Shown piece after piece: positions 1-22,607 of a stretch of DNA of 64,000 nucleotides. A program made the position numbers and the translations under genes. The stretch's first letter is position 1; each line of letters starts with the position of its first letter. Under the pieces are notes generated by a model, which was given only the letters and a program-made list of their open reading frames with translations, ran no database searches and was not told where the DNA came from. Source of the DNA: Klebsormidium nitens (lineage: Eukaryota; Plantae; Klebsormidiophyceae); assembly GCA_000708835.1 (NCBI GenBank), contig DF237243.1, positions 1-64,000 on the forward strand, read 5' to 3'.

Positions 1-1437
1 ACCTTTTCTACTTGGCTCAGTAGGCGGCAGTTGTAGGCGGCTGACCGTCAGCAGTGAGTCGGGCCGCTTTCGGCGCGAGGCAACTCAAATCGCGCGCACG
101 ACGATCCGTGGCACAAATTGCGGCTGCGCAAAACCCTCTACTACGGTGCGCGCCAGCCCATGGCTGACTCAGCAGATCAGCATGTGCTGCCTGGTGTGCG
201 AGAAATTCGGAATGGGCGCGCTCGCGTAAAACCTTGCTCTACCAGTAAGTGACTGTAAGTCGTCACCGATCTGGGCTGTAAGAGCCTGTAACCGAGTGCC
301 GAATGCATACATCAGAATTTCGACCATGACGTGAGGACCGTACGGTAGAGTCAACGAGTGACGATTCTCGCACGTATGTAAGGCACACAGACCTCATCAA
401 TAATGATCATCAGCATCAAACGTACCGTGTACGGTGTCCAAACACATTGCTAGCGTAGCGTGGCACATTCCTGTACCTGTACTTTAGTACCCAATTTCCC
501 TGTACCGACGAAAAGCATACCTACTGGCTACCTTCTACAGAGATACGCACATTAGGTATTGGAACAAATGAGACAGGCACCCTGATCTCTTTATCCGGGT
601 CTAGACCTGCAGCGCGCACGGCTGGTTCTTCCTGCAGGCAACACGCCAACATTTCCCAATAGTCTTGTAAGCGAGCAATGATGAATGCGGGCAATGGAAC
701 CGGCCGGCCTGAGACTTGTTGGACAGCTGTGAAACACGTTCTCTTGATTCAACTGCTAAGCCAGACAACATTGTCAGCGATTGAGCTGCAAACATCTTTG
801 AAAAATTTCTGTGAACAAGGCGAGCTGACAGTGAAAGTATCCTTGGGCAGTTTCAAGTCTATGAGGGACTGCGATTTCATTGACTAAGGTTAGTAAGGTC
901 ATCAGTGATACAGCCGGTTCGAAAGTGAGCAACGAAACATTCTCGGTTGAAAATCAGAGCGAGTCTCTTTCATGTTTCCAAACCTATCGCCTTTCCATTT
1001 CAAAGTCAGTCACAAGAGTCCAGAACCTGTTTCGCGAATTGCCAAATGCTTGTTGGGGCTTCTTATACTTCAATGGAAAGTCTAAGCCCCAGTAAAAAAA
1101 TCCCACACCCAGCTCTTCTATGGAGTGCTCTTGAGTTCCCTACCCAAGTCCTTTTCATTCAATACGCAAAGAGGACACGAGGAAATATAAGAAGTTTTTG
1201 GAATAATGACATGGGTACCACCTCCTCCGATGATTCTTTTCCAGCCTTGCATGCTTGAGTCTGCGCTGCAACGTACACAAGTTGATTTAGTCGATTTGCC
1301 GCTGCTACATCTTCCTTTCAATGTTTGAGTCAACATTCTACTGGAATCTTTACGAGTGTGCAAATGCTTTCGGAGACCGATCAGGCACTGGTTACTGTGT
1401 AAAAGGGACGAAGTTTTTCTTACTGATCCAGATATCT

Positions 1438-4400
1438 ATGTCCAAACCCACACCAAACCCATCTAGCAAAATGGGCAAGAATGCGCCAGCGGCAGGCAAA
1501 CCTGTTGCTTGTGCAATGCAGGTGAAACCCTCGAAGCATCTCTTAAGCTGTCCGGCCTCAACGTCTCAGATCGCTCGAGTTGGTGCACAATCCGGAACCC
1601 CCAGGCCCCAAACCTCCATCAACAATGCCCCCCACTCCACACCCCCCAGCCGCGGCTGCCCCTGCTGACATCATCTCCCCCGCCCGTCAGACGGTACTAG
1701 CGGCGGAAGAAACAAACGCCAAGAATGGTCACGAGTACCTGGGGGCCCTGTCATTGAGCCATGGGTTCATGCCCAAGCGCGAGCCGCTCACAAGCCTGCC
1801 CCCCAAGTTCAAACAGTGGGATGAGCTTGTCACAAAGTTACCGGAGCTCCATGCCAAGATGGGCGCCCGGGCTTTCATGGATGCGATGCCGGTTCTAAAC
1901 GCTGAGAAGCTTCCGGATGAGTATGTGCACCGGGCAGGTGAGTGCAGCAGGAGCTTCCCTCCTCAAAAGTGCTGTCAACGAGCTTCCTCCTATGTTGTCC
2001 TTGTTTTCAGATACCGTGAACTCCAACAATTTGAAGCTGCTCTAATACATGTTGGGCCTCAGGTGTCTTCTTGTCTTCTCAACCTTTGCAGCTGTCCCTC
2101 CAGAGTTTCATTTTCCTTGTTGCACCTTTGGCTGCTTCCGTTGGTTCAAGAACGCAGAAGGGCTCCTGATCTCAACTCCTTTGTGGTTCTGAAGGACACG
2201 GCGTCAAGAGGAATGCCAAGACTGTCAGCAGGCATATACACAGTTTAAACCTGATCCACCTTTCTCATCCACACCAACTTTTCCCTTCAGCACTGGACCT
2301 CAGCATTAGTTTGCAGCCAGACCTCTTCCCGCAAACCTGATCAGGGCCTCACAATTCCTACAACGACGACTGCCAGTGAACTTCAAATACATCCTTTGAT
2401 TCTTGATGGCCTTCTCCCCAACCTTCCAGTGCTGGTCCTCGGCGTTGCCGCCATGTCGTACTACAACAACGGCGTGAAGCACTGCGGGGGCTACCTCCCG
2501 CCAGCAATCGACATTCCTTGGGGGGTCCTCTGTAGAAAGCTGCAGCGCAGGACCCAGCTCACATACTTTGACAACTCGCTGTACAACTGGGAGCAGCCTG
2601 TGCCCGAAGGGAAGTCCCCGGGGGGCGGAGAATACGATCCAGAGAAGCTGGTAGTCCACAAGCTGATCCGGAGCGTGTCAATCTCAGGCGCCAGGTGCGA
2701 AGAGATCTTTTTCATGACCATGGTGAGTGACGGCAGGAAGTATGACCTGATCAGGTTTTGCATGTACTCAGCCTGTTGCGTCTTTTCTGAGGAGTCAAAG
2801 ATAGTTCTTTCGATTAGGAAGGCACTTTCACATGATTTCTACTGCCCAGAGAACTGACGCTTTCAAGTTTGTACTTGTACAAGGGATATAAAGACAAACA
2901 AAGGCTCGATGTCTAGCACTAATATTCAACAAAGTTCGGCAGTCCCTTGCACCCAGCAACTTTCACAGAACATGCTTTCATCCGGTCTGGCTCAGCGGAC
3001 GTCTTTTAGAAAGTTTGCGTGCATGTCAAAGGAGCTGTCAAGTGTGGTAGACTCTAGTGAAGCTCGCAAAAGCTCCAACAAGGGCCCATAAAGCTGGGGT
3101 GGTATGTCTTTACGCTTATATCGAATCAACCACCTTTTCCACTTTCTGCAATTTCGCAGAAGCAGCAGTAGGGATCTAAGTTTGGGGAAGCCCCTATAAA
3201 GGTCCTCACACAACAGTCCCTATGTACATTTCTCTCCGTTCCCCTTTGTGCAGCTGTACACGATCTCCAGCAGCACCCCGATGGTCCGCTTCTGCTGCGA
3301 CATCCAGGACGCAATTCTGCGCGACGACCCTCCCGCGCTCAAGAAGGCGCTTGTGGGGTTGGGCGACGCCGTTTTGGCGATGACCAACGCGTTTGACGAA
3401 CTGTCCGCACTGCCCGAGTCGGACAGCTTCTCGGACCCGATCGAGTGGGCGCCCATGGGCAACGGGGTCATCGACCGGCGCTTTCCAGTTGCGGGTACGC
3501 GCGTTCGAGTTGTGACTCTCATGCCGTTTTGTACTTTGCTTCGCTTCTACGAGGTTGATGGCTTGTCTACGCAATGACATCAGGGGTGTGAAAGTTGCTC
3601 GATCAGATGAATGCGATGCTTTGAAGCAGTTTGAAAGGTGCTTTCCGTAGCGCTCCGAAAGGCTGGTTGAGTCGTACTCCGTCTGAAAGAGCCGATCCTT
3701 GCGAGGCTGCTCAATGTTCGACGATTTTCCCCCTTCCGCCAGTATAGGCTTTCTTGATTGGACACTCGTTCTTCAATTTGAGCCGCAGCGAAACAGGCCT
3801 TCAGCCAGCTGTCGGCCCATTCACGTACAATGCTCGCACCAATCATTTAAAATGCCGTGTTCACCTCAGGTGTGATCGGCGGCGGCACCCCGGTGCCCCA
3901 GGTTCTGGACGTTCTCTTCGAGCGCCGCAACTTCAAGCACGAAGTGAGCGCCATACAGAAGGAGCTGCTGACTGTGTGCCCGCCGCATTGGGTCGCCTTC
4001 TTCTCCGCGCTAGGCGAGGTCAGCCTGCCGGGCTACGTCAGGGCGTCTGGCGACAATGAGCTGAAGGGGCTGTTTGCGCGGGTGAGCTCTCCGAAGCCGA
4101 GAATACTGTTCTCGCAGTATTTGCTGGGTTAGCTAGAGAATAATGAAGATGCAAACGACAACCTGTTCAAATCCGCTAAGGCATGTTCCGTCTGACAAGA
4201 CTTGCAGATGCTGAGAGATGTTCTCAGCTTCCGGTCCAGACTCGTAGGGCAAGTATTGACCTATTTTGGGACGAAAAGGTGCGAAGATTTGGACGTCAGG
4301 CTCTTGAGTTTCGAGCGGGGAAACTGTCAAGCGATAATGGGTCGATGCTCTTAGCCCGCAGCGGAAGTCCTGAAGTTCGAATAAACATTTTTCAGTCGTT

Positions 4401-7400
4401 GGGACACGCGCCCCAATGTTTCGCATGTATTACCGCGCCAGTGGACACGTGCACTTGGTCTTGCAGGCGCTCATGCTCTACGCTGGGAAGGAGGGCTTCT
4501 TCGGCCGGCATATGCTGAAGATGTACGGATTCCTCAATAACACGTTCCGGTGCGGCCTGCGGGGTCAGACTACCGGAGGCCAAGCGCACTCCAGGGTGTG
4601 GTCCCACGCCCTGGGTGAGCAGACTTCTTGAAGGTATCGAATATTGAGAATCTTATGCTTCTGGAGGCTCATGCGCGGGAGAGTGGGATGCACTCTTTCG
4701 GCAAAGAGTGTATCAGGGCAAGATTTCCTATCTTCACGAGCTTCGCTCTGATCAGCGAATCTCACCCGAGCGCTCTTTCGACAATCCGGGTAAGAGGCGT
4801 CTTTCACTGATAAAGCACTTCGCTTATCTCGAATTGCTCCTTCCCGCAAAGCCGCTCCGGAAATGTTGGTTCAGCCAATATTGCAATCCATCTGCTCTTC
4901 CACCCACTTGCACTTCTGTCGAAATACGAGAAAGGTAACTGACGAGGTCTACAAGCTCAATCCTCAAAGTGTTCCAAGTAAGATCACCGTTCCGTTCCAC
5001 AACCACCTATACTATTTGCAGTCGAGCTGGAGAAGACGCGGCAGGAGCGCATCACGGAGTACCCGTCCGACGTGTCGAAAGCGGTGGCATACATCCACGC
5101 CAGTGACGAGAACGACGAGACGCCAAAGAGCGGGAAGCTGATTCACTTCGACATCAGCGGGAGCGGGCAGGTGTTTCGGGTGCGCTACAGGCCTGAATTT
5201 CAATCTCCTTCTTCTGCCTGCCCACTATTCAAGATAGATATTGTGCTTTCAAGTATCTAAACAGCCGAGCTGACAAGAATAGAACCTTTGTGGTCAGACT
5301 GTTCGCTTCGCCACCTTGAAATGCACTTAACAGAGCGGGCTGCGTAGCCTTCGCATCTTTGAACAGCTTTTCCGCTTTTCATCTTCGCAGCAACTACGTT
5401 TCTGTCCTTCAGTTCGCATCATCTTGGGACGAAGTCCCGACTCTACTTTCCCTCTTCTCGTCAGCCCCGCGTTCCGTTCTGCTTCCCTTTTGTATGCTAC
5501 CTTCATTCCAAATCCGCTCGTCTCAAACTTATAGGGACAGGCCATGGAGCACTGGTAGAGTGAAGAACGTCCAATTAGTGAATCTCCTAATGTGGTTGTA
5601 GACAAAATCAAGCTCGACATAAGTCCTGAAATGTCATTGAAGCTTCAGAGTACCCGTTGTATGTTCTCGCTGTCAAAGTTCTGAAGTAGAAACCCTAAAG
5701 CTTTTTTTTGTCAGGCGGGAGACCGTCTGATGGTCCTGCCCAAAAACGAGCACCGCATTGTCACGCTGACGATCAACTCGCTCGGGGCCTCGGCCGAGGA
5801 CATGGTTCCCCTGGACGCCACGTGGCGGCGCGCGCTCGCGGGGTTCGGCAAGTACCGCAGCAGGGAAGTCCTGGAAAAAGTACCGCTCTACGAGTTTCTG
5901 GAGCGAGCGCAGGTAAGCCGCAAACTCCGAGACAGAGTGGTGATTTTCGCGGACCTTGAGCGTCCGTAGAGATTTTGAGGTATATAGGAGCTGGTTTGTA
6001 AAGTTTGCAACTACTCCCAAATCTGCCCGATCAACCAATCCTTCTCGATCAACCCTTGCTCTTGTCTAGGTTGAAACTGCCTTCCGCCAAGCTCGTTCTG
6101 CAAAGCTGAGAGTGCTTGATTTGCCAGCGCTCTTATCTCACCTTAGTTCCAGTGGATCATTCGTCTCGGAAGTGGATCTCATCTTGACCGCTGTTCCGCA
6201 GTTCCGCCCGGTCTCCCTCAGGACTGCGCGCGCCTTGCTGGAGATCGCTCCTTCGGCTACACTGCAGACACTGGTGGATCGACACCTTGAGGAAAGTAGC
6301 TTAACTCACTTCTCGAACACTCTTTTTATTGCATACGTAGGTTCAGCCAATCTGTCCCTTCTGTTCGAACACCAGATAATAGAGCCGTTTCAGAAACGGC
6401 GCCACTCTTGAAAGGATCATGTCTCATGTCTGCGTTGAGGACTTTTCACTAATTATCCAATCTAGAAAGCAACCGACAATCCACTCAGGTCTATGGTTGC
6501 CGGGATGGGTCAAGTTGCAGACTTGTCTATCTTCACCACTGTCGCACGTGAGTTACATTCCAAGAGTTCGACTTAGACTGCTTCCTACGTGCTGAGTCGC
6601 TTTTCGTCCAATTTGCAAATATGGAAGCGGATTGTCCACGGGAAGCCCTCTTCACGCCTTGCCGAACGGAAGCAATGTGCAGATTCTACCCGACTCAGGA
6701 ACCTGCTCTCAGAGGCAGCCGTAAGCGCTGACGAAAGCAGTCTCCTCGTTTTTGCAGGCCCAGCTTGAATTTTGGGACCTCCTTATTGTTGCGGAGCTGT
6801 TCAACCCCGGGTTTGACGCGGTTGCCAAGGCAGACATGCTGACAGCAGACCCGGACAGCCCCTTCGCGCTCTGCAAAGTATTGGCCCCCGACTCTCCACG
6901 CCAGTACTCCATCGCTTGTGCCCCGGAGGAGGAGGGCAAACCAGCGAAGCAAATCTCTATCCTGGTGGGGGCTTGGAAGTGAGCACTCCTGACCCATATT
7001 CATCCCCTCAGAAAGATGAAGCACAATCTCTAAATCTGATTGTGTGGTTTGTTGGGCCTAAGGGGAGAGCCTAATCTATTGGTCTACTTGTAGCCGGGAA
7101 CGACATTCACCTGATTGTTCTTGTAGTCAGTCAGTCGTGACAAGTTTCTCAGTCGGGTCGCTTCCACCGTCACATTCTTCAATTTTCAGCACCTCCATCG
7201 GACAGGTGCTCTTGATACGCAGGTTGATTTATCACGCTAATACGCTTTCAACAAGAATGCATTCTCTTCCTGCGATTCTGAGAAATGAGGTGGGAGTTGG
7301 GGACGTGTGCACTTTGGATCCTCGACCCTTGGGAATTGAGCCTGCGAAAAGGAACCCACCTGAGCATGGCCCCTGTTAATACGTCAACACCGTTTCGAAA

Positions 7401-10400
7401 TGCAAGCTACGACAGACCCTCCGTTCACTCGGTTTTGTGCCTCAGATACACCACCAAGAACAGCACCAAGCTCACTCTTCCCCTTTTGAGCGACGAGGCC
7501 GCGGTCATCGAGCGCCGCGGGGTCGCCTCCACGTTCCTGCACAGTCAGACGATCACCCGGAGGGCCCTGGTAACAATACAAACCTAGCCTCTACCCGACA
7601 TCTGAGAAAAAGCAGTCAAAGCGGATCTATAACCGGATACAATCGACTATACACGCGATTGTGATAAATGATGGTGATTTTTCTAGGCAACCACGGAACT
7701 CTGGGTCCTTGTGCAATCGTAGACAAGGAAGGGACCCATACCGTAGCGTTTCGCCCTTCAATATTGTTCCGTTTTGCAGTCGGTACACGCACCGAGCCTG
7801 CTTTTATCCTTGCTTGAGCTTCGATTTCTATTCGAACTGAAATCGAACTTGAAACCGTTGCACTTTGACTTGTATAACCACTTCAGTGAACAATAAGCCC
7901 TCGACTCAACTGAAAACGCAACCCAAACCAAAGTCTCACGTTCTTCCCACTCGCACCCACCCTACATTCCCTAACAACCGCCCTAGCTCCGCTCCTCAAC
8001 ATTGGCTGGACTCATTGACGTTGCGTCGATAATCTATCTTATTACTTCTCAGGGGGCGGAGATATTCCGCAAGCTCGACACCGACGAAGACGGCCATCTG
8101 AGCCTGCCGGAGGTTGCGTACGGGCTGGAAGGCCTGGGCTTCTCCAAGGATTCCGCCGTGGAGCTGTTCCGGCGGGCGGACGCGGACCAGAACGGAAGCG
8201 TCAGCATCGACGAGTTTGCGGAGTCCATGGCGTTCATGTGGCTGGGGTGAGGAGCCCAGAAGTCAAGAATCTTGAGCATCCAGTCACATCTCCGGGAACT
8301 TCGCTCTGGTTAGGCTTTGCTTCAATCGAGGCCGAAAAGTAATAAGGACTGCAACACGCAATTCGATCCTGCGCTGACTTAGCTTCAGGTTGCACACAAG
8401 AACGTCCCCCACAGGCTTAGAACTGACTCAACCAAATTCACGTCGGTAGAAGAGGTTTGGTCTGGGCTCTTCTCGAAAGACCTAAGACGATCTCCGCATA
8501 TCTGGCAAGTAATGGATATTAGGGGCAAAGCACGCTGTTTGCTTCGTAGCTGGACCGTGCAGCACGGGAAGAGAACGGCTTGCCATTACTGCATCCCCGC
8601 CGGACGGTGCAAGGCGAGAAGAGGAATCTCTGACAAACCCACTCGTCAAAATCTCCCCCTCTGTCTGCCTGAAGAAGACGTAGTACGTCATTTCTAACAA
8701 CCCTCCCTGACACACTTATTTCGTCATCGCCGCTAAACTTCAACAATCAGACCAACAACGACGTAACACTGAAAATATGGTGATCCGTCGCAACGTGCAG
8801 GGACGAAGACGAGGATGATGGCACCGAAAAGGGCGACAGTCGGACCGAGAAGCACCCCGTGCAGGTCAGCGTGGTGTCGCCGCCCCGGTTCTGCCTCCCG
8901 GAAAACCCCGCCACCCCACTTGTCATGTTTGCCGGCGGAACTGGTGGGTGCTTCAGCTCGGAATCTACTTTGATATGGTATTAGACGGCATTTAAAAGTA
9001 CCCCTCAGAGTACCCTGTCAGACTTTTGCATTCGCGTTCTGAGCCAATTCCCGCTTTCTTTCCTCTGGCCTGTCCTGCAGCTTGCGGGTTCGCTTTGTTC
9101 TCTTCCTTCGGAAGTCTCAACCGTCCCAGCACCTGGTAAAGCTCCAAAACTTACTTTATAGGAGAGGGAGGTCATATACACCTTGTCTCCAACTCTACAT
9201 TGAATGAAGGGCCATGTTCCGCCAGGCCAGGTCTAGTCGATTACTTGTCGTCGTCATGCGAAGTAAGAAAGCCTGGCTGCCGTGACGTGGATAGTGATCC
9301 TCAAATGTTCAAGTAGGTAGATAGAGGATTTTATCCTTCAATTTCAGTAACAGCGTCTTCGAATCTTTCCCCGCCATGCATGAGTCAGCGGGCCTGCTCA
9401 GTGAGTTCAGACGATTCATGCCCTGCGCTCACAGACTTACTCAGTAGGCGCGACTCCCAGCCGTTCTGAGATCTCCGGCAGCTCGCTCTCAATCTCGGTT
9501 ACCTCCAATTCCTCTTTTTGTTTTCAGCTACTCGGCCACTTTGCGCAGGTTTCTTGGCAAATGAGCAATTCCGTTTTCGTCGTGGGCATCGCGACTTTCT
9601 GCGCGCTGGGCAGGCGCTCTCCGAGCGCGCAAAGCGCGTCACTGATGAGTCTTCAGGAATTTCTGAAACCTGGCCACTCGCGCGACTTTTTCGGCATAAC
9701 ATCGATTCCGTTTCCGCTGCAGGCATCGCGCCGTTCCGCGGCTTTTGGCAGGCGCTCGCTGCGCGCCCAAAACGCGCCATGGTGCTTTTGTACCTAAGCG
9801 TTCAAAGCGAGTCGCAGATGTTACTGCGGGAAGAGATGGAGCAGCTGCAGCGCGAGGGGAAGCTGACGGTGCGCGTCGCGCTGTCGCGGCAGGACAACGA
9901 CATGGTGTTCGACAAGACGGTCGGAAAGTGAGTGCGTTCAGGCTCTTCTAAGCTTTCTAAGTCGATGCAGTACTTTCAACACGAGAGCGGAAACGGAGAG
10001 GAAGTAAGTGAGGTAATAGAAAACTTGGAGCTGTAAGCAATAAAAACAGTTGAGCTTCGACACGACAGCTGCCGTAACTCCATGCGGAAGAGATGAGAGG
10101 AAGCAGGGAGGGTGATTTTACTCTGAACATGATTTCCGGGTCGTTGCGTAAAATCCTTTTTGATTGTGGATGGATTCTTTTACTTTGGAAACTCTCGGGT
10201 GCCGGCCAGGAACGCCGTCGAATCTTTCCGTCTTGGCCATATTCTATATGTACCTTGCTTTTCTGCATCATTTGTGAGCTTTATGGCGGCTTTCAACAAA
10301 TGTTTCGTTCCTTCAACGCTTCTCAGGTTCGTCCTGAAGCCCGGCAAGCGCCGGCGCATCGACGCACTCATGGAGAGCGAGTGGGACGCCGCGCTGCTAT

Positions 10401-13235
10401 ACCGGATCCTGCTTCCGGCGGAAAAGTCGGGGTTGGGCGGAACGCTGTACGTGTGCGGCCAGGCTGGTTTCACTAAGACGATCATGACGGCGCTCAAGAA
10501 TCTCATCAAACGCTTCCACATCGACATCCCCGGGTCGCTGGACCCCCATCCCGAGAGCGTGAGCAGCCCGCTCTAGTTGCTTTCGGCGGGAGGCGGCGCT
10601 TTGTGAATTGTATTCTAAAGCCGCTCTCGTTGTAAATGTTTGAGCAGTATGGTTCGAGCACCGGCCATTGTTCGAAAGCTGAAGTTATTGTTTGCCTTCT
10701 GACGCATAAGCTTTTGCTTGCGTGCTACTCCTCGTGGCTGACGTTTCTGACTGTTGGCGTCCAGCTCACTTTTATCTGCATATGATCAGCGGCCATATGA
10801 CTGCTTTGGGAATGCAGTAATCCCTTGTTATTTCTCCTTAATATGCAAAGTCGTGTGACAAATTGTTCGCCGTGAGCCAGAAGCCCCGAAAGCAGAAAGT
10901 CGCATTCTTTCATCCCTTTATTGCAGATTCTGTCCCGCCTGGTTGCCCAGCGCCGCCTCTGCCTGGAAGTTTTCACGTCGCACGCGGCCGCGGACCGCGC
11001 GGCGGAGGGGCGTACCTTCTGGCCGAGCGAGCTGTGCTTGCGCAATAATGACGTGGACGGCTGGTGGATGGCCATCGAGGCACGTGTGCTTGACGTCAGC
11101 GAGTTCCGGAACCTGCACCCCGGGGGGCCGCTCCTGACCGAGGGCTACTGCGGGTTCGACGCCACCGAGGTGGGCGGGTGACGTCGCTCTGCGCCCAATT
11201 CATGACGTCATGAACGTATGCAAAGCTGGAAGCCTCCAAAAATCAGCCTCTGAGAGCGAGAAAAAGCCATTGTCCCCCTGTTCGAAAGGAAGTTTGGCAT
11301 GCATTTGAGAGATGGCGCCGTTCTTCGGGAAACATTGGAAATAAGAACGGACAGGAGTTCCAGGGACCAAGCGCTCCGTCCACCATGGGAAGGAATCTGG
11401 CGCGCGAGCAGTCAAACATTTCTTCGCCCGGTCTTAAGGAACATCTCTTCTTGGAGAAGCAGTCCATCATCCGAAGCTAGCCCCAACTGCTGCCAAAGTG
11501 CTATTCGAAAGAGGCTCAAAAGTCAGTGTTTGATTCCTTCACTAAGATCACTGTTTGAGAGCACTTTTCAGTACAGGAAGGGAGGATCAAGATCGACGCC
11601 AACCTGTCAAAGCTTGAAGATTTTCTGCCATTTGTATTCTGAAACGGACGGTTCGGCTCCTCAGGCGTACTATGAAGTCGGACATCAGGCCGCGTCCGAA
11701 GTGCACTCCATGCTCGCGCTGTACGAGATCGGCAGGCTCCGCTGGATCGACCTGCCGCCCCCTCCGGAGGGGGATGCTTTTGCCGCCAATTTCACCCCCG
11801 TCTTGGTGCGCAAGTGGGTCGCGTTCCTTTTTAAAATGGCGGAGCTAGAGGGCATGTGCCGCGCGGCGTTCACCATGATGGACAAGGTGAGGGGGCGACA
11901 CGTGTACGGTAGGGAGAGCAAAGTAACGTCAACGCCCCTCATGAAGGCACTGGTCCCGGCTTTTTTCATGGAAGCAGAGAAGAGTCAGCAGAAGAGCGAC
12001 CCCAATTAGCGGCCTTCTTTCTCGTCCTTCTGTTGATCCTTTGTCGGTCCCGAAATTCTTATGCATTGTTGATCTGGCTTCTTGATTTGGGAAATGCATG
12101 GGGTTCAGACGCCTTCTAGCGACACTGAAAGGCACACAAGGAACATCACCCGACATAAGTGTTTAAAGCGTAACCGAGAGACGGTCGTTTTTGAAGAGGA
12201 TAGAAGCATTGGGCGACACTTATCGAACCTCTCGTCGTTTCCGCTTCCAGGAGCTCCAGAAGGCGCCCTCGCCCCAGGCCTACAACTACCTCCAAAACCT
12301 GCTGACGGTAAACAACATGGAGCTCAGTTGGCTGCCCATGATAGCCGGGGAAGACTGGGAGGCACTCCTCGCGAGCACCTTCGGCGCGGCCGCTCGCGCG
12401 CCGGCGGCGCCGGACGCGGGCGAACGCGCGAGCGCGGACGAGACGGTCGCGGCCGCGAGCGCCGCGGGCCTCGCCGACGCGCTCGCCGTCATCACAAAGA
12501 AGGCGGAGATCGACGGCTCGGAGGCCGGGAAGCTCCGGCAGGGCCTCCACGCGGCGCTCTCTGATCTGCTGACGGAGTCGACGCAAGGCGACACGGCGAA
12601 AGCGCCGACGGTCGCGAAGCAATGGGCGGCGATGCAGCGAATTAGGGCCGCTTCGCAGGAGCTGATGCGGGAGGCCAAGTTGGGCGTGCGGGACGTCGTG
12701 CGCAGCTTCGAGAACGTGAGTCCGGTGGTTTTGAACGATCGGACAGGAAATGGGAAAGGAACGCGTCTGTTCTTCGAACATCGTCCGGCCCTATTCTTTG
12801 TTCTGATCTGCTTCTGATCTTTGCTTCTGATCTGCTTCTTTGTTCTGATCAATCGCAATCACTTCGTGCATTTGCATTCGCGTCAGAATGTTGACAGAAG
12901 GAACTCGAGCGGAACGAGCGAGGGCGCAGATCTTTGCTACGTCCTTCTGTTGCAACGAGAGCAGAATCCCCATTTCGTGGGGGGCATCAGATCTCAGCCT
13001 TTTGCTAAGCAGCCTGCGTATCGGAGGAACCTTCCAATCAAGCGCTGAACGCCCGACCTCGCTTACTTTGCAGTTGTCGACGCTGAGCAAGCCGCAGGAG
13101 GTGCTAGCCGCGTACAACAATCTGCCGCTCAAGATTGCCGGGTACTGCGCGGCCGTCCCGAGGGCGGTTCAGAAGTACACGAACACAGTCACGGCGGTCG
13201 CCCTCGCGCTGCCGCATTTCAAGGCGGCCAATTGA
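1438..13235 (+). CDS. Multidomain heme/flavoprotein: IDO-family dioxygenase domain + FAD-binding + EF-hand pair + NAD(P)H-binding (FNR/CPR-type) + cytochrome b5 + unknown C-terminal region (~1,263 aa, 18 exons)
   Basis: Exons: 1438-1521, 1691-1937, 2430-2722, 3254-3494, 3870-4081, 4467-4614, 5022-5179, 5715-5912, 6758-6978, 7446-7569, 8053-8246, 8801-8943, 9723-9927, 10327-10558, 10927-11169, 11665-11886, 12251-12715, 13074-13235. All introns are GT-AG with matching phases; total 3,792 nt, one frame, ending TGA. IDO motifs: HGFMP...PLTSLPPKFKQWDELVTKLPEL, LPPAIDIPW, LTYFDNSLYNW, FFGRHMLK, TTGG. Reductase motifs: AGDRLMVLPKN, PRQYSIA, RRGVASTFL, F-LPENP...MFAGGTGIAPFRGF, LYVCGQ, LEVF. Cytochrome b5 motifs: HPGG...DATE...VGH. 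The first exon and start codon are less certain; an acceptor-like site at 1430 suggests a 5'UTR intron. Confidence 0.9.
1691..4614 (+). other. IDO/PrnB-superfamily heme domain (exons 2-6 of the fusion gene)
   Basis: The translated exons align by eye with the IDO family: N-terminal GFxP-x-PL-x-LP-x-F-x-W, YNW, E-x-x-FF, the DP helix, the LD-x-L-F-x-R turn, P-x-HW/R, the putative proximal heme His (CAT at 4509-4511 in GRHMLK) and a GTGG-like loop (TTGG). Confidence 0.85.
8053..8246 (+). other. Paired canonical EF-hand Ca2+-binding loops inserted in the reductase
   Basis: Loops DTDEDGHLSLPE and DADQNGSVSIDE both fit D-x-D-x-D/N-G-x-h-x-x-x-E, each preceded by an F-R-K/R helix. They are encoded on one exon between the FAD-binding exons and the GGTG NAD(P)H-binding exon. 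Confidence 0.9.
10990..11735 (+). other. Cytochrome b5-like heme-binding domain (spans exons 15-16)
   Basis: RTFWPSEL...NN...WWMAIEARVLDVSEFRNLHPGG...YCGFDATE|AYYEVGH...ML..YEIGRL matches the b5 fold. Both axial His residues are present (11116-11118 and 11683-11685). Confidence 0.9.
12794..12850. repeat. Short (TTCTGATC)-based tandem repeat in intron 17 of the fusion gene
   Basis: ttctttgttctgatctgcttctgatctttgcttctgatctgcttctttgttctgatc. Confidence 0.75.
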
Positions 13236-13710
13236 AATACTAATCCTGAGGCTGTTACTTCGACAACTCGCAAGATGTCTAGGAAACACATTTTGGCAGC
13301 CACACTGATACCCAAGCTCGCTTCAAGACACTGAACTGTGGGGGCTTCGTTGCAAGACCTCCTATTGACATGTTTCACTGATATAATGACATATTCCACT
13401 GATATAAGCTGGGACCGGAGAAACCGCTCAACGCGTGCTAGTAGCGAACCATGTCAAAGTCACTCAAAGCATTGCAACCGTTCAAATGCGTGTAGCTGGC
13501 TTATAATTCCCCAACCGCTCAGGGCACTCTAGTCATGTGAACGAGACCCGCAACTCACCTCTATGTCATCCAACTCAGCTAGTAATACTTTGAGGTCTTA
13601 AAACAAACATTCTCAGTACAAAACTCGTTGATGCAGAAGGGCGGCCTTTGAGTGCGTTATGAATATGGATGTGATGCAACCGCAATGCACTGACGGTACT
13701 AAGTCGATGA

Positions 13711-17252: not shown

Positions 17253-20200
17253 TCAAGTCTCTCCCGCTGACTCCGGTTTCTTCCGGATGGGCCTCCACAG
17301 GTTCGCCACCCAGGGAGCGAATTCGAAATTGTCTGGGTCGCGAGCGTGCGTCTTGTAGTAGTCCGACCAGTCACACCGGTTCTCTGACGTCAGCACCCCC
17401 CCCCGGCTGGAGTCGTACACGCACAGCGGCAGCCAGTCGTCGCCCCCGTTCATGCGCCGCTTGCGCTCCCGGGGGTACGCGAGCGGGGCCTGGATATACC
17501 TGCTGGGGGAGGGCGATGACGTCATTGCAACGGTGACGGCGACTGTATTAGGTGGGACTACAAAAGGCAGTATCTCCGACTGAGGGGGCCCATCTCGCCT
17601 GCGTTTCCGTGCTGTTTCCCAGAAGAGTGAATTTCAGGTATCTTTTAGGGTAAAGAATCATTTGAGGAAGTCCGTCGGAACACATCGCGGCCTGAAGCAA
17701 GCTAAGTGGTGGCAAGAACGTCATTTACGCGTTCGGTGTCGAAGAGTGCGGGGTCGAAGAGAAGATTGATTTTGCAAAATGGAGACTGAGGGTTCTGTCA
17801 ACATCGATAAGACGACGAGATACAGCGACATAATCCTGCTTTGGGCATTGTCTGACCACAGCGAAACTGACCACAAAAGTTCCAACCTCCGAAAGGCAAA
17901 CCTTGCCACGCAACAAAGATCGACAAGGTCCCCACTGATGGCCCAAGGGTTACCAACTCAACAAGATCCCGCTCGGACAGAATCCTGAGCTATCCGCACC
18001 TGACTCCGTCGAGCGTCATGTCCCAGCTGAAATGCGTATGCCCAAATAAGTGGCAACCCGGAGCGCCCGCCGCGTGGATGGCTCGCACGCGCGCCTCGAG
18101 CGCGTGCGACCCAACGGCCTTTGCGAGGTTGGGGTAGAAGAGGAAGCGCTTCTCGGGAATCAGCTCCAACCTGCGGAAGACGGAAGAACCTTTAGGGCTC
18201 AGAGCGCGCAAGACTACACGGGTCAAATCGGGGACCGTTGTAACAGGCTTAGCCTTTTTAGCCAGGAGACTCCGCCGAGTAGATTCGTGAAGCCAAACTC
18301 CTTCATTTATAACGTTCAGAATCTTCGTCTCACTTCCGCCACCGCCCTCAACGAATTCCCTTCCAGACCTGATTCCAACAAAAATCGAAACCCCCTTCGC
18401 TTCAAACCGTCCCTCTTTACCCTTGCCCAGAGCCCTTGTCCTTCGCTTTCTCAAACACAATCTGTACAGAAGCAATGGAAGATATTTCGAGACCGCATAC
18501 CTTGGGAGGAAGTGTGAGAACGTGATGACGTGGCACCCCGGGTTGGAGGTCGGGTCGAAACCCCGGTGCAGCTCGTGGTTCATCTCGTCGAACGCGCGTG
18601 CCACGGATTCGGTCCGGGCGTCCCAACCGGCGGGCCACTTGCAGACTTTGTGGTCTTTCGCTACCTGCGGAAGAGAAGAACGGCTAGGTCAGCACGGAAA
18701 CTTGCCGACGTCGTCGGATTTGAATGAGGTTTCCCCTCTGCTGTTTTGCAGAGAGGATAGAGGGTCAGTTTCGACAACCCGCGCAGCAAAGAGCATATTC
18801 ACACCTGTTATCAGCAGGGTAGTAGAGAGCCAAACGCGAATACCCCAGGGATAAGGCGGATCGGCAACAAAAGGCCGTTGCGAGATTCGCGTGGGGAAAT
18901 GCCTGCAACCTATGACGTACCTTATAGATGATGCGAAGCTCAAACTACAAAGAGCAGCGGACTCTTTTCCCTACGGTATATAGTGGCCGAATTTCGGTAA
19001 GTCAGATCTAGGCAGAAATGTCCGGACACGTGTCAGATTTTCCACCTTAGAGATTCGCCTACATGTTGAAAGGAACAACTTAACGAGTAAACTACCTGTC
19101 ATAATCTTAAGCCAAAGAACAATTTCTCAAACCATAGCAATAAAAGAATCATGCTCAACGGGGTTTCGTCGTCAAATGTTGGTAATCGGGCTCCATGATC
19201 AAGCCAGCTGTCAAAATGCAGAATCAGTCCTTACCTTTTCAATAGGGGGGATGTTGTAACCCGGAATGTCGGGCTCGGTATCAAAGCTTATATGGTGCCA
19301 AGAAAGAATCGGCACCACCCACACCCCGTGCTCCTCTTCCGCTACTCCGCTGTCTCGGCCGGAACTCCCCTTGGAGACGGACCCCCCCGGACCATCCCCT
19401 CCCCCTTGTGTCCCACTTTCTCCCCCCCTGCTTCTGCTCTTTTCCTCGCTGGTTCCGGCTCCGCCCCCCCTAGTTCCGCACGCATCTGCCCGAGCTCCGT
19501 TCTCTTCCGTCCGGGTTTGGTTTTCCCCCCATCTTATCCCGTTCTCGGTTTCCCTTCTTCCGATTCCACCCTCTCCGAAACCGCCCGTTTGGGAGCTTAC
19601 CCACTCCTCGGCACTCGTCAATCGCTCGTCGACGCTCGACAGCGGTTCTGCAACTCGCGCTTCCGTCGTTCGCCCCTCGGTTTCGGCACAGGCACCGTTC
19701 GATCCGGCCCCTGGAGCGGATCGCTGCGGTTCTCTTCTACCTGTCAAAGACGGTCGGACATTCCCCTCGACCGGCTCCGCACAGTTTGCTACCCGCTCCG
19801 GGATTCCAGCTTCCGGGTTACGCTCCTGCTCGTCGACCTGACTATGCGTGCTAGCAACACTCTTAAGATTATCTACACTCGCAGAAATGCCTGCATCAAT
19901 ATCTGCCCGCTCAGAAAGTCCAGTCGAACCGCACCCACCGGGCTCTTTCCGCTGGCTATTTACAATTGCCTGCTGCCCGCTTACTCCGCCATTGACGGGA
20001 CCTCTCCCCAGCGCCGGCTCCTGTAGAACTTTTTCCTTACTTGCTTCCCCGCAGTTCTCTGAAGCACTGCCGCCCTTTCTGGTCTGACCTGACTTTTCCT
20101 CCGGTTTCAGAAACTTGGGCCGCGTGTCGATCCCCAGATCCTGACAGATCTTGAAGAGCACTGCGAGCTTGCTCAGCGAGTTTTCCGGGGGGGCACTTGC

Positions 20201-22173: not shown

Positions 22174-22607
22174 GCCGCTGAGGGCTGCATGCGAGGGGAG
22201 GCATCACGCATCGAGTCTGTCGTCTGTCGCCGTCGGAGCCAAGACTTCTCAGAGTTCTCTGAAACTGAATCTGAGACTAAGGTTTGAAAGCTTGGCCAAT
22301 CTGGACTGGGACTCGGAAGTAAATGGCAATGGATGGGGGGCCCAAACGTATGGTAGAGAGTGGTAACTGTTATTAGTGGAAACGTATTCCCTTCTTTCTA
22401 GTTCTCAGAGTCAGGGATTGAAGTTTTTGCTAGCGATCAGGCGCGGCTGGGTGGTGGCGGCTGTTTCAATGCCAATGGAGCGGCCTTGCAAGGGCAGTCG
22501 GGCGGGCCTGGTCCTCCTTAGAACTTCTAGAAGAGCAACAGCAGACGTATCTAGGTTACAGTAGAATCAATACTTGTTGAATGCTCATCATTGTGCGGCA
22601 GCCGCCC

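What the first reader, a model, noticed from the sequence alone, without database searches (positions are those of the whole stretch)
1438..13235. Self-contained electron-transfer chain fused to an IDO-family heme enzyme (IDO-FAD-EF-NAD(P)H-cytochrome b5)
Seen: one 18-exon reading frame joins an IDO-superfamily heme domain, an FNR/CPR-type reductase, an EF-hand pair and a bis-His cytochrome b5. Established: IDO enzymes need ferrous heme, and cytochrome b5 with its reductase is a physiological reductant of mammalian IDO1; known IDOs are standalone proteins. Inference: this polypeptide carries its own NAD(P)H -> FAD -> b5 heme -> catalytic heme chain, analogous in logic to P450BM3, NOS or flavohemoglobin. 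I recall related uncharacterised fusions with an AYAG..GF.GRH..K.YG motif in actinobacteria and fungi, but I cannot verify this and know of no biochemical description.
Basis: partly seen in the sequence, partly recalled or inferred. Interest (0 to 1): 0.92.

Follow-up and report, generated by a model that had tools for sequence, protein, structure and literature searches.

The report
IDO enzyme fused to its reductase
A green alga (Klebsormidium nitens) makes one 1287-residue protein that joins an IDO-type heme oxygenase to an NADPH/FAD reductase, a calcium-binding EF-hand pair and a cytochrome b5, a member of a large bacterial family for which I found no biochemical study.

Summary
Spliced RNA contigs from four runs give 17 coding-region splice joints and one open frame of 18 coding exons. 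The ATG is at 1625 (not 1438) and the stop ends at 13235, giving 1287 aa.

The domain order is: IDO-like heme domain, CysJ/CPR-type FAD/NADPH module without an FMN domain, an EF-hand pair inserted in a loop of that module, cytochrome b5, and a helical bundle with no convincing structural match.

The architecture is not unique. At least 316 bacterial protein clusters are colinear with it over their whole length, mostly Chloroflexi and Actinobacteria. They carry only generic names, and half have an N-terminal FHA domain. AlphaFold DB also holds longer proteins named IDO that carry the same b5-plus-helix module.

A neighbouring gene identifies the window as Klebsormidium nitens, a streptophyte alga. 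Three related eukaryotic loci carry the same intron-rich gene with the EF-hand insert. No bacterial member has that insert.

All cofactor motifs are conserved. The arginine that holds the carboxylate of L-Trp in IDO1 has no counterpart.

Best reading: a self-sufficient, probably Ca2+-gated IDO-family oxygenase wired NADPH, FAD, b5 heme, catalytic heme. Its substrate is probably an indole other than free tryptophan. Ten literature searches found no description.

The parts
560..886 (+). 5' UTR exon. The 3' end at 886 is fixed; the 5' end is approximate.
   Evidence: The loose end before 1520 in all four runs matches window 857-886. The contigs carry 215-327 nt upstream of 1520.
1520..1937 (+). 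Coding exon 1. ATG at 1625, residues 1-104, IDO-like domain N-terminus.
   Evidence: Joint 1937/2430; Pfam IDO 8.5e-9; depth 0 upstream of 1499.
2430..2722 (+). Coding exon 2, residues 105-202, IDO-like domain. Contains YNW and the distal-helix FF pair.
   Evidence: Joints; Pfam IDO 3.7e-8.
3254..3494 (+). Coding exon 3, residues 203-282, IDO-like domain.
   Evidence: Joints; colinear with the bacterial family.
3870..4081 (+). Coding exon 4, residues 283-353, IDO-like domain. Glycine-rich distal loop and FERR motif.
   Evidence: Joints. This was the query that recovered the full-length fusions.
4467..4614 (+). Coding exon 5, residues 354-402. YAG..GFFGRH..K.YG motif; predicted proximal heme ligand His368 at 4509-4511.
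   Evidence: The histidine is invariant in 27 IDO-domain sequences, conserved at >=90% in the 131 full-length bacterial members and kept in the window protein, and kept in the eukaryotic orthologues.
5022..5179 (+). Coding exon 6, residues 403-455. Linker and start of the FAD-binding domain.
   Evidence: Joints 4614/5022 and 5179/5715 in all four runs.
5715..5912 (+). Coding exon 7, residues 456-521, FAD_binding_1-type domain.
   Evidence: Joints; aligned to CysJ domain 1 through P0011.
6202..6291 (+). Coding exon 8, residues 522-551. Followed by a non-canonical GA..AG intron (6292-6757).
   Evidence: Joint seen in all four runs; GA..AG is the only placement ending in AG, and none gives GT..AG.
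6758..6978 (+). Coding exon 9, residues 552-624. FAD motif RQYS at 6899-6910.
   Evidence: Aligned with CysJ RLYS; conserved in the family.
7446..7569 (+). Coding exon 10, residues 625-666. GVASTFL strand just before the insert.
   Evidence: Reciprocal loose ends at 6978 and 7446; the X6 contig spans it.
8053..8246 (+). Coding exon 11, residues 667-730. EF-hand pair; Ca2+ loops at 8077-8112 and 8179-8214.
   Evidence: Pfam EF-hand_7 8.9e-11. Both loops are canonical. Absent from 131 bacterial members and present in the orthologues.
8801..8943 (+). Coding exon 12, residues 731-778. Acidic linker, last FAD-barrel strand (RFCLP), start of the GGTG NADPH motif.
   Evidence: Joints; alignment to CysJ FRLP...GTGIAPF.
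9723..9927 (+). Coding exon 13, residues 779-846, NAD_binding_1. IAPF; Ser833-Arg834 at 9884-9889.
   Evidence: Pfam NAD_binding_1 1.4e-7; the SR pair aligns with CysJ SRD.
10327..10558 (+). Coding exon 14, residues 847-924. NADPH domain, YVCG motif.
   Evidence: Joints; conserved C890 and G891.
10927..11169 (+). Coding exon 15, residues 925-1005. End of the reductase (Phe940 at 10972-10974, aligned with the terminal Tyr of CysJ) and first half of b5 (HPGG; His988 at 11116-11118).
   Evidence: Pfam Cyt-b5 7.2e-8; CysJ alignment.
11665..11886 (+). Coding exon 16, residues 1006-1079. Second b5 heme ligand His1012 (11683-11685) and start of the helical domain.
   Evidence: Family-invariant histidine; b5 fold in the homologue model, Z 13.4 to bovine b5.
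12251..12715 (+). Coding exon 17, residues 1080-1234. C-terminal helical bundle with an Ala-rich insert.
   Evidence: Joints; colinear with the bacterial C-terminal domain.
13074..13235 (+). Coding exon 18, residues 1235-1287 and the stop codon.
   Evidence: Joint 12715/13074; frame ends at 13235; the X6 contig continues into the 3' UTR.

Best explanation
This is one nuclear gene of the streptophyte alga Klebsormidium nitens. It encodes a single 1287-residue soluble protein, a eukaryotic member of a large family, otherwise bacterial in these searches, with no biochemical description that I could find.

Proposed mechanism:
1. NADPH binds the CysJ/CPR-type module and reduces its FAD.
2. FAD passes single electrons to the bis-His heme of the fused cytochrome b5. 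The b5 stands where diflavin reductases have their FMN domain.
3. b5 reduces the His-ligated heme of the N-terminal IDO-like domain, which binds O2 and oxidises an indole-type substrate.
4. The canonical EF-hand pair, inserted in a surface loop of the FAD barrel only in the algal lineage, probably makes electron flow Ca2+-dependent.
5. The C-terminal helical bundle, which packs on b5 in the model, probably positions b5 or mediates oligomerisation.

Shown here: the single spliced transcript, the domain folds and their order, conservation of every cofactor motif, and the lineage-specific insert. Inferred: the direction and partners of electron transfer, the NADPH preference, Ca2+ control, and the substrate class.

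The substrate is probably not free L-tryptophan for NAD synthesis. The residue that binds the Trp carboxylate in IDO1 has no counterpart, and green plants lack the kynurenine pathway.
For: - Transcript: joints and a single 1313-codon frame.
- Family: an exon query found 1100-1457-aa proteins matched at the same relative position. Their Pfam order is IDO, FAD_binding_1, NAD_binding_1, Cyt-b5. A profile search found 316 clusters at E<=1e-10. They align colinearly end to end, C-terminal domain included.
- IDO fold.
- Cofactor residues: the window protein keeps 173 of 266 positions that are >=90% conserved in 131 bacterial members. These include His368, R599/Y601/S602, G776-G779/P782/F783, S833, C890/G891, F940, H988/G990/G991 and H1012.
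- CysJ alignment covers RxYS, GTGIAPF, SR and the terminal aromatic residue.
- b5 fold plus helical bundle: model pLDDT 87, pTM 0.87.
- EF-hand insert: absent in all 131 bacterial members. It is canonical in the window and in two related loci and degenerate in a third.
- Purifying selection: all 18 coding exons are colinear in the one related locus that spans the whole gene, at 39-79% aa identity. The other two loci are colinear over nearly the whole protein: residues 18-1277 at 32-62% identity, with the two b5 exons covered by one match, and residues 1-1104 before the contig ends, mostly at 67-98%.
- Organism: the neighbouring ORF is 99% identical to KFL_002940030 of K. nitens.
- Tryptophan chemistry in bacteria: Trp-halogenase genes sit next to the fusion gene in 2 of 6 loci, one inside an NRPS/PKS cluster.
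- Cytochrome b5 as a reductant of IDO: Vottero 2006 and Maghzal 2008, as cited in PMC4191572.
- Viridiplantae lack the kynurenine pathway: PMC4217691.
Against: - No biochemical data exist for any member, so no cofactor, electron step or substrate has been observed.
- The structural models are of a bacterial homologue that is 33% identical, not of the algal protein. The tools gave no coordinates, so inter-domain geometry is unknown.
- A dioxygenase needs only priming electrons. A permanently fused three-cofactor chain may therefore point to different, electron-consuming chemistry.
- Two residues invariant in the bacterial IDO-like domains differ in the alga: Glu181 of P0011 becomes Tyr204, and Lys247 becomes a gap.
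- The loop alignments used to judge the absence of the IDO1 Arg231 counterpart disagree between the IDO1 and IDO2 alignments.
- The EF-hand loops are degenerate in one related lineage, so Ca2+ control may not be essential.
- No single RNA contig spans the whole coding sequence.
Confidence: 0.6

Rival explanations
1. It is a canonical tryptophan 2,3-dioxygenating IDO (L-Trp to N-formylkynurenine). The fused chain serves only to re-reduce heme that autoxidises to the ferric state.
For: IDO fold and proximal histidine. b5 is a physiological IDO reductant. The distal-helix Phe-Phe pair of IDO1 is kept. Trp-halogenase neighbours occur in bacteria.
Against: There is no counterpart of the IDO1 carboxylate-binding Arg231 in the window protein or in the family consensus. 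Viridiplantae lack the rest of the kynurenine pathway. In Kitasatospora a truly canonical IDO (Pfam 3.5e-89) sits next to the fusion gene and is only 29% identical to the fused domain, so the two are not redundant. IDO branches distant from IDO1 show very low Trp turnover (PMC4217691).
Confidence: 0.2
2. It is an electron-consuming heme enzyme for small molecules rather than for indoles. Candidates are an NO dioxygenase of the flavohemoglobin type, or a Ca2+-activated soluble NADPH oxidase that makes superoxide or H2O2 for signalling, in the manner of NOX5/RBOH.
For: A complete NADPH-to-heme chain is what turnover-by-turnover electron use requires. Different lineages attach different regulatory modules to the same core: FHA fused in about half of the bacterial members, a CBS-domain gene overlapping the start codon in 4 of 6 bacterial loci, and EF-hands in the alga. 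That pattern suits a signalling enzyme.
Against: A large, conserved IDO-type substrate pocket and small domain are retained. There is biosynthetic-cluster context in some bacteria. Nothing direct points to NO or ROS.
Confidence: 0.15
3. The N-terminal domain is a non-catalytic or sensor heme domain, and the protein mainly donates electrons through b5 to other proteins in trans.
For: In Kitasatospora a standalone canonical IDO lies immediately downstream. ESM Atlas holds clusters whose members carry IDO and Cyt-b5 hits, or IDO and FAD_binding_1 hits, on representatives of 668 and 590 aa. AlphaFold DB has a 788-aa protein with the IDO domain followed directly by the b5-plus-helix module. These suggest modular use.
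Against: Only 1 of 6 bacterial loci has an adjacent IDO. The IDO-like domain is the best conserved part (mean column identity 51%, 39 invariant columns in 27 sequences) and keeps its heme ligand in all lineages.
Confidence: 0.04
4. It is a gene-model artefact: two or more adjacent genes read as one.
For: No single RNA contig covers the entire coding sequence.
Against: There is an unbroken chain of joints at similar depth in four runs, no internal transcript ends, and one 1313-codon frame. Hundreds of intron-less bacterial single-ORF proteins have the same domain order. Three other eukaryotic loci show the same colinear exons.
Confidence: 0.01

Closest known systems
Bacterial IDO / FAD_binding_1 / NAD_binding_1 / Cyt-b5 / helical-domain proteins with only generic names (e.g. 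Kitasatospora sp. MAP5-34 WP_280714323.1; MAGs of Caldilineaceae, Anaerolineae, Acidimicrobiales)
   Same: Colinear over the whole length, about 33% identity, the same cofactor motifs, and the same C-terminal helical bundle.
   Different: The algal protein has 18 coding exons, a 64-residue EF-hand pair plus acidic linker inserted in the FAD barrel, and an Ala-rich insert in the C-terminal domain. It has no FHA domain or CBS partner, and it differs at two bacterial-invariant IDO-domain residues.
Human IDO1 / IDO2 (PF01231), reduced in trans by cytochrome b5 plus its reductase
   Same: Two-domain IDO fold (TM 0.7-0.85 for the homologue model), histidine heme ligand, Gly-rich distal loop, and b5 as reductant.
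   Different: About 18-20% identity. A few extra residues precede the histidine (GxxGxxGRH). There is no Arg231 counterpart. The reductant chain is covalently fused rather than separate.
E. coli sulfite reductase flavoprotein CysJ / NADPH-cytochrome P450 reductase (FAD/NADPH module)
   Same: RxYS, GTGIAPF, SR, YVCG and a terminal aromatic residue; best PDB match 1DDG at 1.8e-24.
   Different: No FMN (flavodoxin) domain; a cytochrome b5 follows instead. The terminal aromatic is Phe and is followed by more protein. There is an EF-hand insert.
Natural b5-reductase fusions: Ncb5or/CYB5R4 and assimilatory nitrate reductase
   Same: FNR-type flavin domain passing single electrons to a fused b5 heme, which reduces a further metal centre or heme protein.
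   Different: Those use the small b5-reductase-type FAD domain with b5 on its N-terminal side. Their terminal acceptor is molybdenum cofactor or a separate protein, not a fused IDO heme. (Comparison from established knowledge, not tested here.)
Self-sufficient heme oxygenases P450BM3, NOS and flavohemoglobin; EF-hand-gated NOX5/RBOH
   Same: The logic of one polypeptide carrying NAD(P)H, flavin and catalytic heme; Ca2+ control of electron flow in NOS (through calmodulin) and in NOX5/RBOH (through EF-hands).
   Different: A different catalytic fold and ligand (His-ligated IDO versus Cys-ligated P450/NOS or globin). A heme rather than FMN is the shuttle. The EF-hands are inside the flavin domain rather than at the N-terminus. 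This is an analogy only.

Membership tests
IDO family (Pfam PF01231) | Significant match to the IDO profile | tested here: met
   Window exons score 35.1 and 33.0 bits (cut-off 26). Full-length homologues reach 5e-27 to 5.5e-31. The family profile hits IDO2 at 2e-31 and IDO1 at 4e-29.
IDO family (Pfam PF01231) | Two-domain all-helical IDO fold | tested here: met
   AF2 of P0011:1-425 (33% identical homologue, pLDDT 91) gives Foldseek top 50 all IDO1/IDO2, probability 1.00, TM 0.64-0.85 over about 390 columns. This was not modelled on the window protein itself, because no single reference exists for the spliced product.
IDO family (Pfam PF01231) | Proximal histidine heme ligand (IDO1 His346) | tested here: inconclusive
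   His368 aligns with a histidine invariant in all 27 IDO-domain sequences and >=90% conserved in 131 full-length members. It lies one helix after the point where the IDO1 alignment ends (IDO1 residue 339, i.e. chain 2d0t_A index 342, offset +3 from my recalled IDO1 sequence). The HMM alignment stops just before it, so the equivalence rests on motif position.
IDO family (Pfam PF01231), Trp-cleaving subgroup | Arg binding the L-Trp carboxylate (IDO1 Arg231) | tested here: not met
   There is no Arg or Lys in the aligned segment of the window protein (ESDSFSDPIEW) or in the family consensus (YSxxYVDPVVW). The loop alignment is ambiguous. The canonical Kitasatospora neighbour has two Arg in a corresponding stretch, FYHRVRP.
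IDO family (Pfam PF01231) | O2-dependent indole ring cleavage activity | not testable with these tools
   Needs an enzyme assay.
Diflavin reductases (CysJ/CPR/NOS reductase) | FAD/NADPH module motifs: RxYS, GxGxAPF, Ser-Arg for the 2'-phosphate, C-terminal aromatic | tested here: met
   RQYS 599-602, GGTGIAPF 776-783, S833-R834, F940. Aligned to E. coli CysJ 1DDG through P0011.
Diflavin reductases (CysJ/CPR/NOS reductase) | FMN-binding flavodoxin-like domain | tested here: not met
   No flavodoxin hit in the Pfam or NCBIfam scans of any member. NCBIfam CysJ matches start at profile position about 195-226 of 539-597 and score far below the cut-off. The protein is therefore not a diflavin reductase.
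Cytochrome b5 (PF00173) | HPGG histidine plus a second axial histidine, b5 fold | tested here: met
   Pfam 7.2e-8 on the exon. H988 (HPGG) and H1012 (VGHQ) are conserved. The homologue model matches bovine b5 1F03 at Z 13.4, rmsd 1.6 Å.
EF-hand pair (PF13499) | Two 12-residue loops with Asp/Asn/Ser at positions 1, 3, 5 and Glu at 12 | tested here: met
   The loops are DTDEDGHLSLPE and DADQNGSVSIDE. Pfam EF-hand_7 8.9e-11. Loops are canonical in L001/L007 and L011 and degenerate in L009. Ca2+ binding itself was not tested.
Bacterial IDO-reductase-b5 fusion family (unnamed) | Full-length colinearity, including the C-terminal helical bundle | tested here: met
   MAFFT alignments with 10 and with 131 members; 173 of 266 highly conserved positions are kept.
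Self-sufficient P450 (CYP102) / NOS | Cys-ligated heme domain of P450 or NOS fold fused to a diflavin reductase | tested here: not met
   The heme domain has the IDO fold and there is no FMN domain. The resemblance is functional logic only.

The most novel reading that the evidence does not exclude
The fused chain exists because the IDO-like heme performs chemistry that consumes electrons at every turnover. That could be monooxygenation of an indole compound or cleavage of a carboxylate-free one (tryptamine-, auxin- or melatonin-like), or NO/O2 reduction. In Klebsormidium this activity would be switched on by Ca2+ through the inserted EF-hands. The enzyme would then be a signal-controlled indole-oxidising or ROS/NO-handling enzyme that streptophyte algae acquired from soil bacteria: a functional counterpart of NOS or RBOH built on an IDO scaffold.
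Probability: 0.2. Interest if true: 0.85.

Novelty: new variant of a known kind. Interest (0 to 1): 0.64.

Why it matters
[quoted passage not shown] Here the complete NADPH, FAD and b5 chain is welded to an IDO-type heme domain in hundreds of bacterial lineages and in a streptophyte alga. That is independent evolutionary support for the b5 route. It also offers a self-sufficient enzyme that could be assayed without artificial reductants.

The missing Trp-carboxylate anchor and the permanent electron supply suggest that this branch of the IDO family may do chemistry not yet described for it.

The algal copy sits in a lineage that lacks the kynurenine pathway. It has acquired introns and a Ca2+-binding insert. 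It is therefore a candidate case of a bacterial redox enzyme being domesticated and put under eukaryotic calcium control.

Tried and rejected
- First homology search with a single exon returned only exon-sized fragments because of the length filter. It was wasted.
- I first inferred a dinoflagellate origin from the G|GT..AG|G pattern and the one GA..AG intron. This was wrong: the neighbouring gene is 99% identical to a Klebsormidium nitens protein.
- The metagenome scan with the b5 exon matched 460 patterns, but none was confirmed by tblastn.
- The alignment of two full-length homologues with all window exons (A2) smeared the fragments. I did not use it as a query.
- No full-length eukaryotic protein, and no id for the window's own product, could be obtained. 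Pfam, AF2 and Foldseek on contiguous multi-exon stretches of the algal protein were therefore not possible, and bacterial P0011 was used as a proxy.
- FastTree of 126 sequences: the window protein sits on a very long branch (1.73) joined to P0008, another long branch. The donor lineage is unresolved.
- The C-terminal helical bundle has no convincing PDB match: Z <= 9.4 for the bundle region, within the helical background noted by the tool.
- NCBIfam has no specific model for the family.
- Ten full-text searches found no paper on an IDO-reductase-b5 fusion (one failed on syntax; the others are). The K. flaccidum genome paper does not mention IDO.
- There is no paralogue within the window.
Full report
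**Observation**

I laid Logan contigs of four RNA runs (X1, X2, X5, X6) on 1300-7250 and 7250-13249. They give 16 joints at consistently high contig depth (about 110-330) in every run. The 6978/7446 joint was recovered from reciprocal loose ends. A loose end at 1520 has a sequence found at window 857-886, which marks a 5' UTR exon. Placing each joint on its only consistent splice dinucleotides gives 16 GT..AG introns in the coding region, and one GA..AG intron at 6292-6757.

The joined exons hold one open frame of 1313 codons. The first ATG after the upstream in-frame stop is at 1625 and the stop ends at 13235: 1287 residues in 18 coding exons.

One X6 contig of 2372 nt covers the FAD-motif exon through the EF-hand, NADPH, b5 and C-terminal exons into the 3' UTR. 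Another X6 contig of 1527 nt covers the 5' UTR and the first five coding exons. The four joints between them are each present in all four runs. No internal transcript ends or foreign loose ends were reported. Low-depth contigs that run through introns are ordinary intron retention.

**Domains**

Single exons hit Pfam above the gathering score:
- IDO: 35.1 and 33.0 bits
- EF-hand pair: 8.9e-11
- NAD_binding_1: 1.4e-7
- Cyt-b5: 7.2e-8

The tools take no reference for a spliced product, so I looked for full-length relatives. A search of 1.84 billion representatives with the 70-residue exon 3872-4081 found proteins of 1113-1457 aa matched at the same relative position, residues 265-345. Their Pfam order is IDO, FAD_binding_1, NAD_binding_1, Cyt-b5.

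A local alignment of the assembled window protein with ten of them is colinear from the first helix to the last. It includes about 220 residues after b5 that no Pfam model covers.

**The family**

A profile search found 316 clusters (90% identity) at E<=1e-10. Every one of the 120 listed has the same architecture except one that lacks a FAD_binding_1 hit, and about half have an extra N-terminal FHA domain. Named sources are Chloroflexi (Anaerolineae, Caldilineaceae, Promineifilaceae), Actinobacteria (Kitasatospora sp. MAP5-34 WP_280714323.1, Acidimicrobiales, Solirubrobacteraceae) and one Cellvibrionaceae MAG. The names are generic: 'cytochrome b5 domain-containing protein', 'FHA domain-containing protein', 'sulfite reductase alpha subunit-like flavoprotein'. 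NCBIfam has no model for them; the partial CysJ hits fall far below cut-off.

ESM Atlas clusters whose members carry IDO and Cyt-b5 hits, or IDO and FAD_binding_1 hits, are mostly Actinomycetota. AlphaFold DB clusters include proteins of 788 and 995 aa, named indoleamine 2,3-dioxygenase, that carry both the IDO-like domain and the b5-plus-helix module. I believe these are fungal, but the tool did not show the organism.

**Structure**

A profile of 27 IDO-like domains hits IDO2 (2e-31) and IDO1 (about 4e-29) in the PDB over about 310 positions. AF2 of P0011:1-425 with that alignment gives pLDDT 91 and pTM 0.88. Its top 50 Foldseek PDB matches are all human IDO1 or IDO2, with probability 1.00 and TM up to 0.85.

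AF2 of P0011:805-1113 gives pLDDT 87 and pTM 0.87. It shows a b5 fold (Z 13.4 to bovine b5) packed against a bundle of about seven helices that has no convincing solved relative.

The reductase part aligns best with the FAD/NADPH fragment of E. coli CysJ (1DDG, 1.8e-24), then with P450BM3-type reductases, CPR and NOS reductase.

**Cofactor residues**

Of 266 alignment columns that are >=90% conserved in 131 bacterial members, the window protein keeps 173. These include:
- His368 in GFFGRHMLKMYGF, the predicted proximal ligand
- RQYS 599-602
- GGTGIAPF 776-783
- Ser833 (followed by Arg834)
- YVCG 888-891
- Phe940 in EVF, which aligns with the C-terminal Tyr of CysJ in RDVY
- HPGG 988-991 and His1012

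The Ser-Arg pair aligns with the SRD of NADPH-specific CysJ. From established knowledge of this family, that pair contacts the 2'-phosphate, so NADPH is the likely donor. This is an inference.

There is no flavodoxin domain, so the protein is not a diflavin reductase. The b5 occupies the role of the one-electron shuttle.

**Active site**

By the HMM alignments to IDO1, the Tyr126, Phe163 and Phe164 positions are kept (Y, F, F). Cys129, Val130 and Ser167 are replaced (N, S, M). The segment that holds Arg231, the L-Trp carboxylate anchor, has no basic residue either in the alga or in the family consensus. IDO1 residue numbers come from my recalled IDO1 sequence, checked against the printed alignment of chain 2d0t_A (index = residue + 3). 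The two printed loop alignments differ, so this is suggestive rather than firm.

In Kitasatospora the gene directly downstream of the fusion is a fully canonical IDO (Pfam 3.5e-89) that is only 29% identical to the fused domain. The fused domain is thus a distinct subfamily. The alga also differs from the bacteria at two positions that are invariant in the bacterial IDO-like domains: Glu181 to Tyr204, and Lys247 to a gap.

**The EF-hand insert**

Residues 667-730 form two canonical loops (DTDEDGHLSLPE and DADQNGSVSIDE), followed by an acidic linker. They lie between the strand GVASTFL and the strand preceding RFCLP, in the loop that reads ADRVEEEGE in CysJ. None of the 131 bacterial members has more than 13 residues there.

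**Organism and relatives**

I first took the splice pattern for a dinoflagellate signature. That was wrong. The uninterrupted metallophosphoesterase ORF at 19214-20686 on the minus strand is 99% identical to KFL_002940030 of Klebsormidium nitens, a streptophyte alga of the Klebsormidiophyceae.

Three other genomic loci carry the same gene:
- A JGI metagenome contig (L001+L007): all 18 coding exons, 39-79% aa identity.
- A Logan contig (L011): mostly 67-98% identity, truncated by the contig end in the C-terminal domain.
- A more distant Logan contig (L009): 32-62% identity over residues 18-1277, with the two b5 exons covered by a single match.

All three keep the GRH motif, RQYS, GIAPF, the b5 histidines and the EF-hand insert. 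The Ca2+ loops are canonical in the first two and degenerate in L009, which also has HPAG in place of HPGG. The insert therefore predates the divergence of these algae, but Ca2+ binding may not be universal.

No full-length eukaryotic protein appeared in the protein collections. In a quick tree the window protein sits on a very long branch, so a bacterial donor cannot be named. The patchy distribution in eukaryotes against hundreds of bacterial members makes bacterial-to-alga transfer followed by intron gain the economical reading. That is an inference.

**Bacterial context**

In 4 of 6 loci a CBS-domain gene overlaps the start codon of the fusion gene. In 2 of 6 a tryptophan-halogenase-type gene is adjacent, once within an NRPS/PKS cluster. 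The Kitasatospora locus also holds amidohydrolases, PhyH and sulfotransferases.

This points to tryptophan or indole chemistry, partly in secondary metabolism, and to regulated activity through FHA, CBS or EF-hand modules, depending on lineage.

**Mechanism**

The most likely electron path is NADPH, FAD, b5 heme, IDO-type heme, followed by O2-dependent oxidation of an indole substrate, gated by Ca2+ in the alga.

Cytochrome b5 has been suggested as the physiological reductant of IDO, and it raised the Trp-catalysing efficiency of mouse IDO2 (Vottero 2006 and Maghzal 2008, as cited and discussed in PMC4191572).

Two points push beyond the simple 'keep the heme ferrous' reading. A dioxygenase needs only priming electrons, yet the full chain is conserved across hundreds of lineages. 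Viridiplantae lack the kynurenine pathway (PMC4217691), so a role in NAD synthesis is unlikely. IDO branches far from IDO1 are known to turn over Trp very poorly (same paper).

I therefore rate the readings as follows:
- A self-sufficient indole oxygenase with a non-Trp or modified-Trp substrate: about 0.6.
- A canonical Trp dioxygenase: about 0.2.
- An NO- or O2-reducing signalling enzyme: about 0.15.

**Novelty**

The architecture is present in databases under generic names. I found no paper describing it in ten full-text searches, and the Klebsormidium genome paper does not mention it. The library lacks most subscription journals, so a prior description cannot be excluded.

What is specific to this window is a eukaryotic, intron-rich copy with an EF-hand insert in the flavin domain. 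I file it as a new variant of a known kind: IDO-family heme enzymes and self-sufficient oxygenase-reductase fusions.

Noticed in passing
window 6292-6757: The intron after coding exon 8 is non-canonical: GA..AG is the only placement ending in AG. All four RNA runs support it. All other introns of the gene are GT..AG.
   Followed up: partly
window 2693-3280, 4585-5050, 5883-6226, 6263-6785, 7541-8081, 9076-9751, 11141-11692: Low-depth RNA contigs (roughly 2-10% of the spliced depth) run unspliced through several introns. This looks like ordinary intron retention or pre-mRNA.
   Followed up: no
window 19214-20686 (-): An uninterrupted 491-codon stretch with a calcineurin-like phosphoesterase domain, 99% identical to Klebsormidium nitens KFL_002940030 (a 797-aa model). 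This is what identified the genome.
   Followed up: yes
window 22581-25880 (+): A 1100-codon open frame without introns in an intron-rich genome. It has no Pfam hit and only weak ESM Atlas look-alikes (score 0.69, green-algal hypothetical proteins). It could be a low-complexity gene or a chance frame.
   Followed up: partly
window 48985-49461 (+): A stop-free segment with a sub-threshold Yippee/Mis18 zinc-binding domain hit (24.9 bits, cut-off 26.6).
   Followed up: no
L004, L005, L006, L008 (bacterial loci), gene ending at the fusion gene's start codon: A small CBS-domain gene overlaps the start of the bacterial fusion gene by 1 to 14 nt in 4 of 6 loci. This suggests a translationally coupled regulatory partner.
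   Followed up: partly
L002 13348-14475 (Kitasatospora sp. MAP5-34): A canonical standalone IDO (Pfam 3.5e-89) lies 6 nt downstream of the fusion gene. Amidohydrolase, PhyH and sulfotransferase genes lie around it, which may be a biosynthetic cluster.
   Followed up: partly
P0036-P0138 and others: About half of the bacterial family carries an N-terminal FHA domain (PF00498/PF16697). One branch (P0008, 1457 aa) has an extra C-terminal 6-phosphogluconate/HIBADH-type dehydrogenase domain.
   Followed up: no
L009 7781-7963: In the most distant algal relative the EF-hand insert is kept, but both Ca2+ loops have lost ligand residues (NVAADGKLTLSE and DQGGKGWVSVEE). Its b5 reads HPAG instead of HPGG.
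   Followed up: partly
P0005: A 1611-aa protein matched residues 23-48 of the exon query in 20 separate stretches. It is a repeat protein sharing a short motif with the IDO-like domain, and I did not examine it.
   Followed up: no
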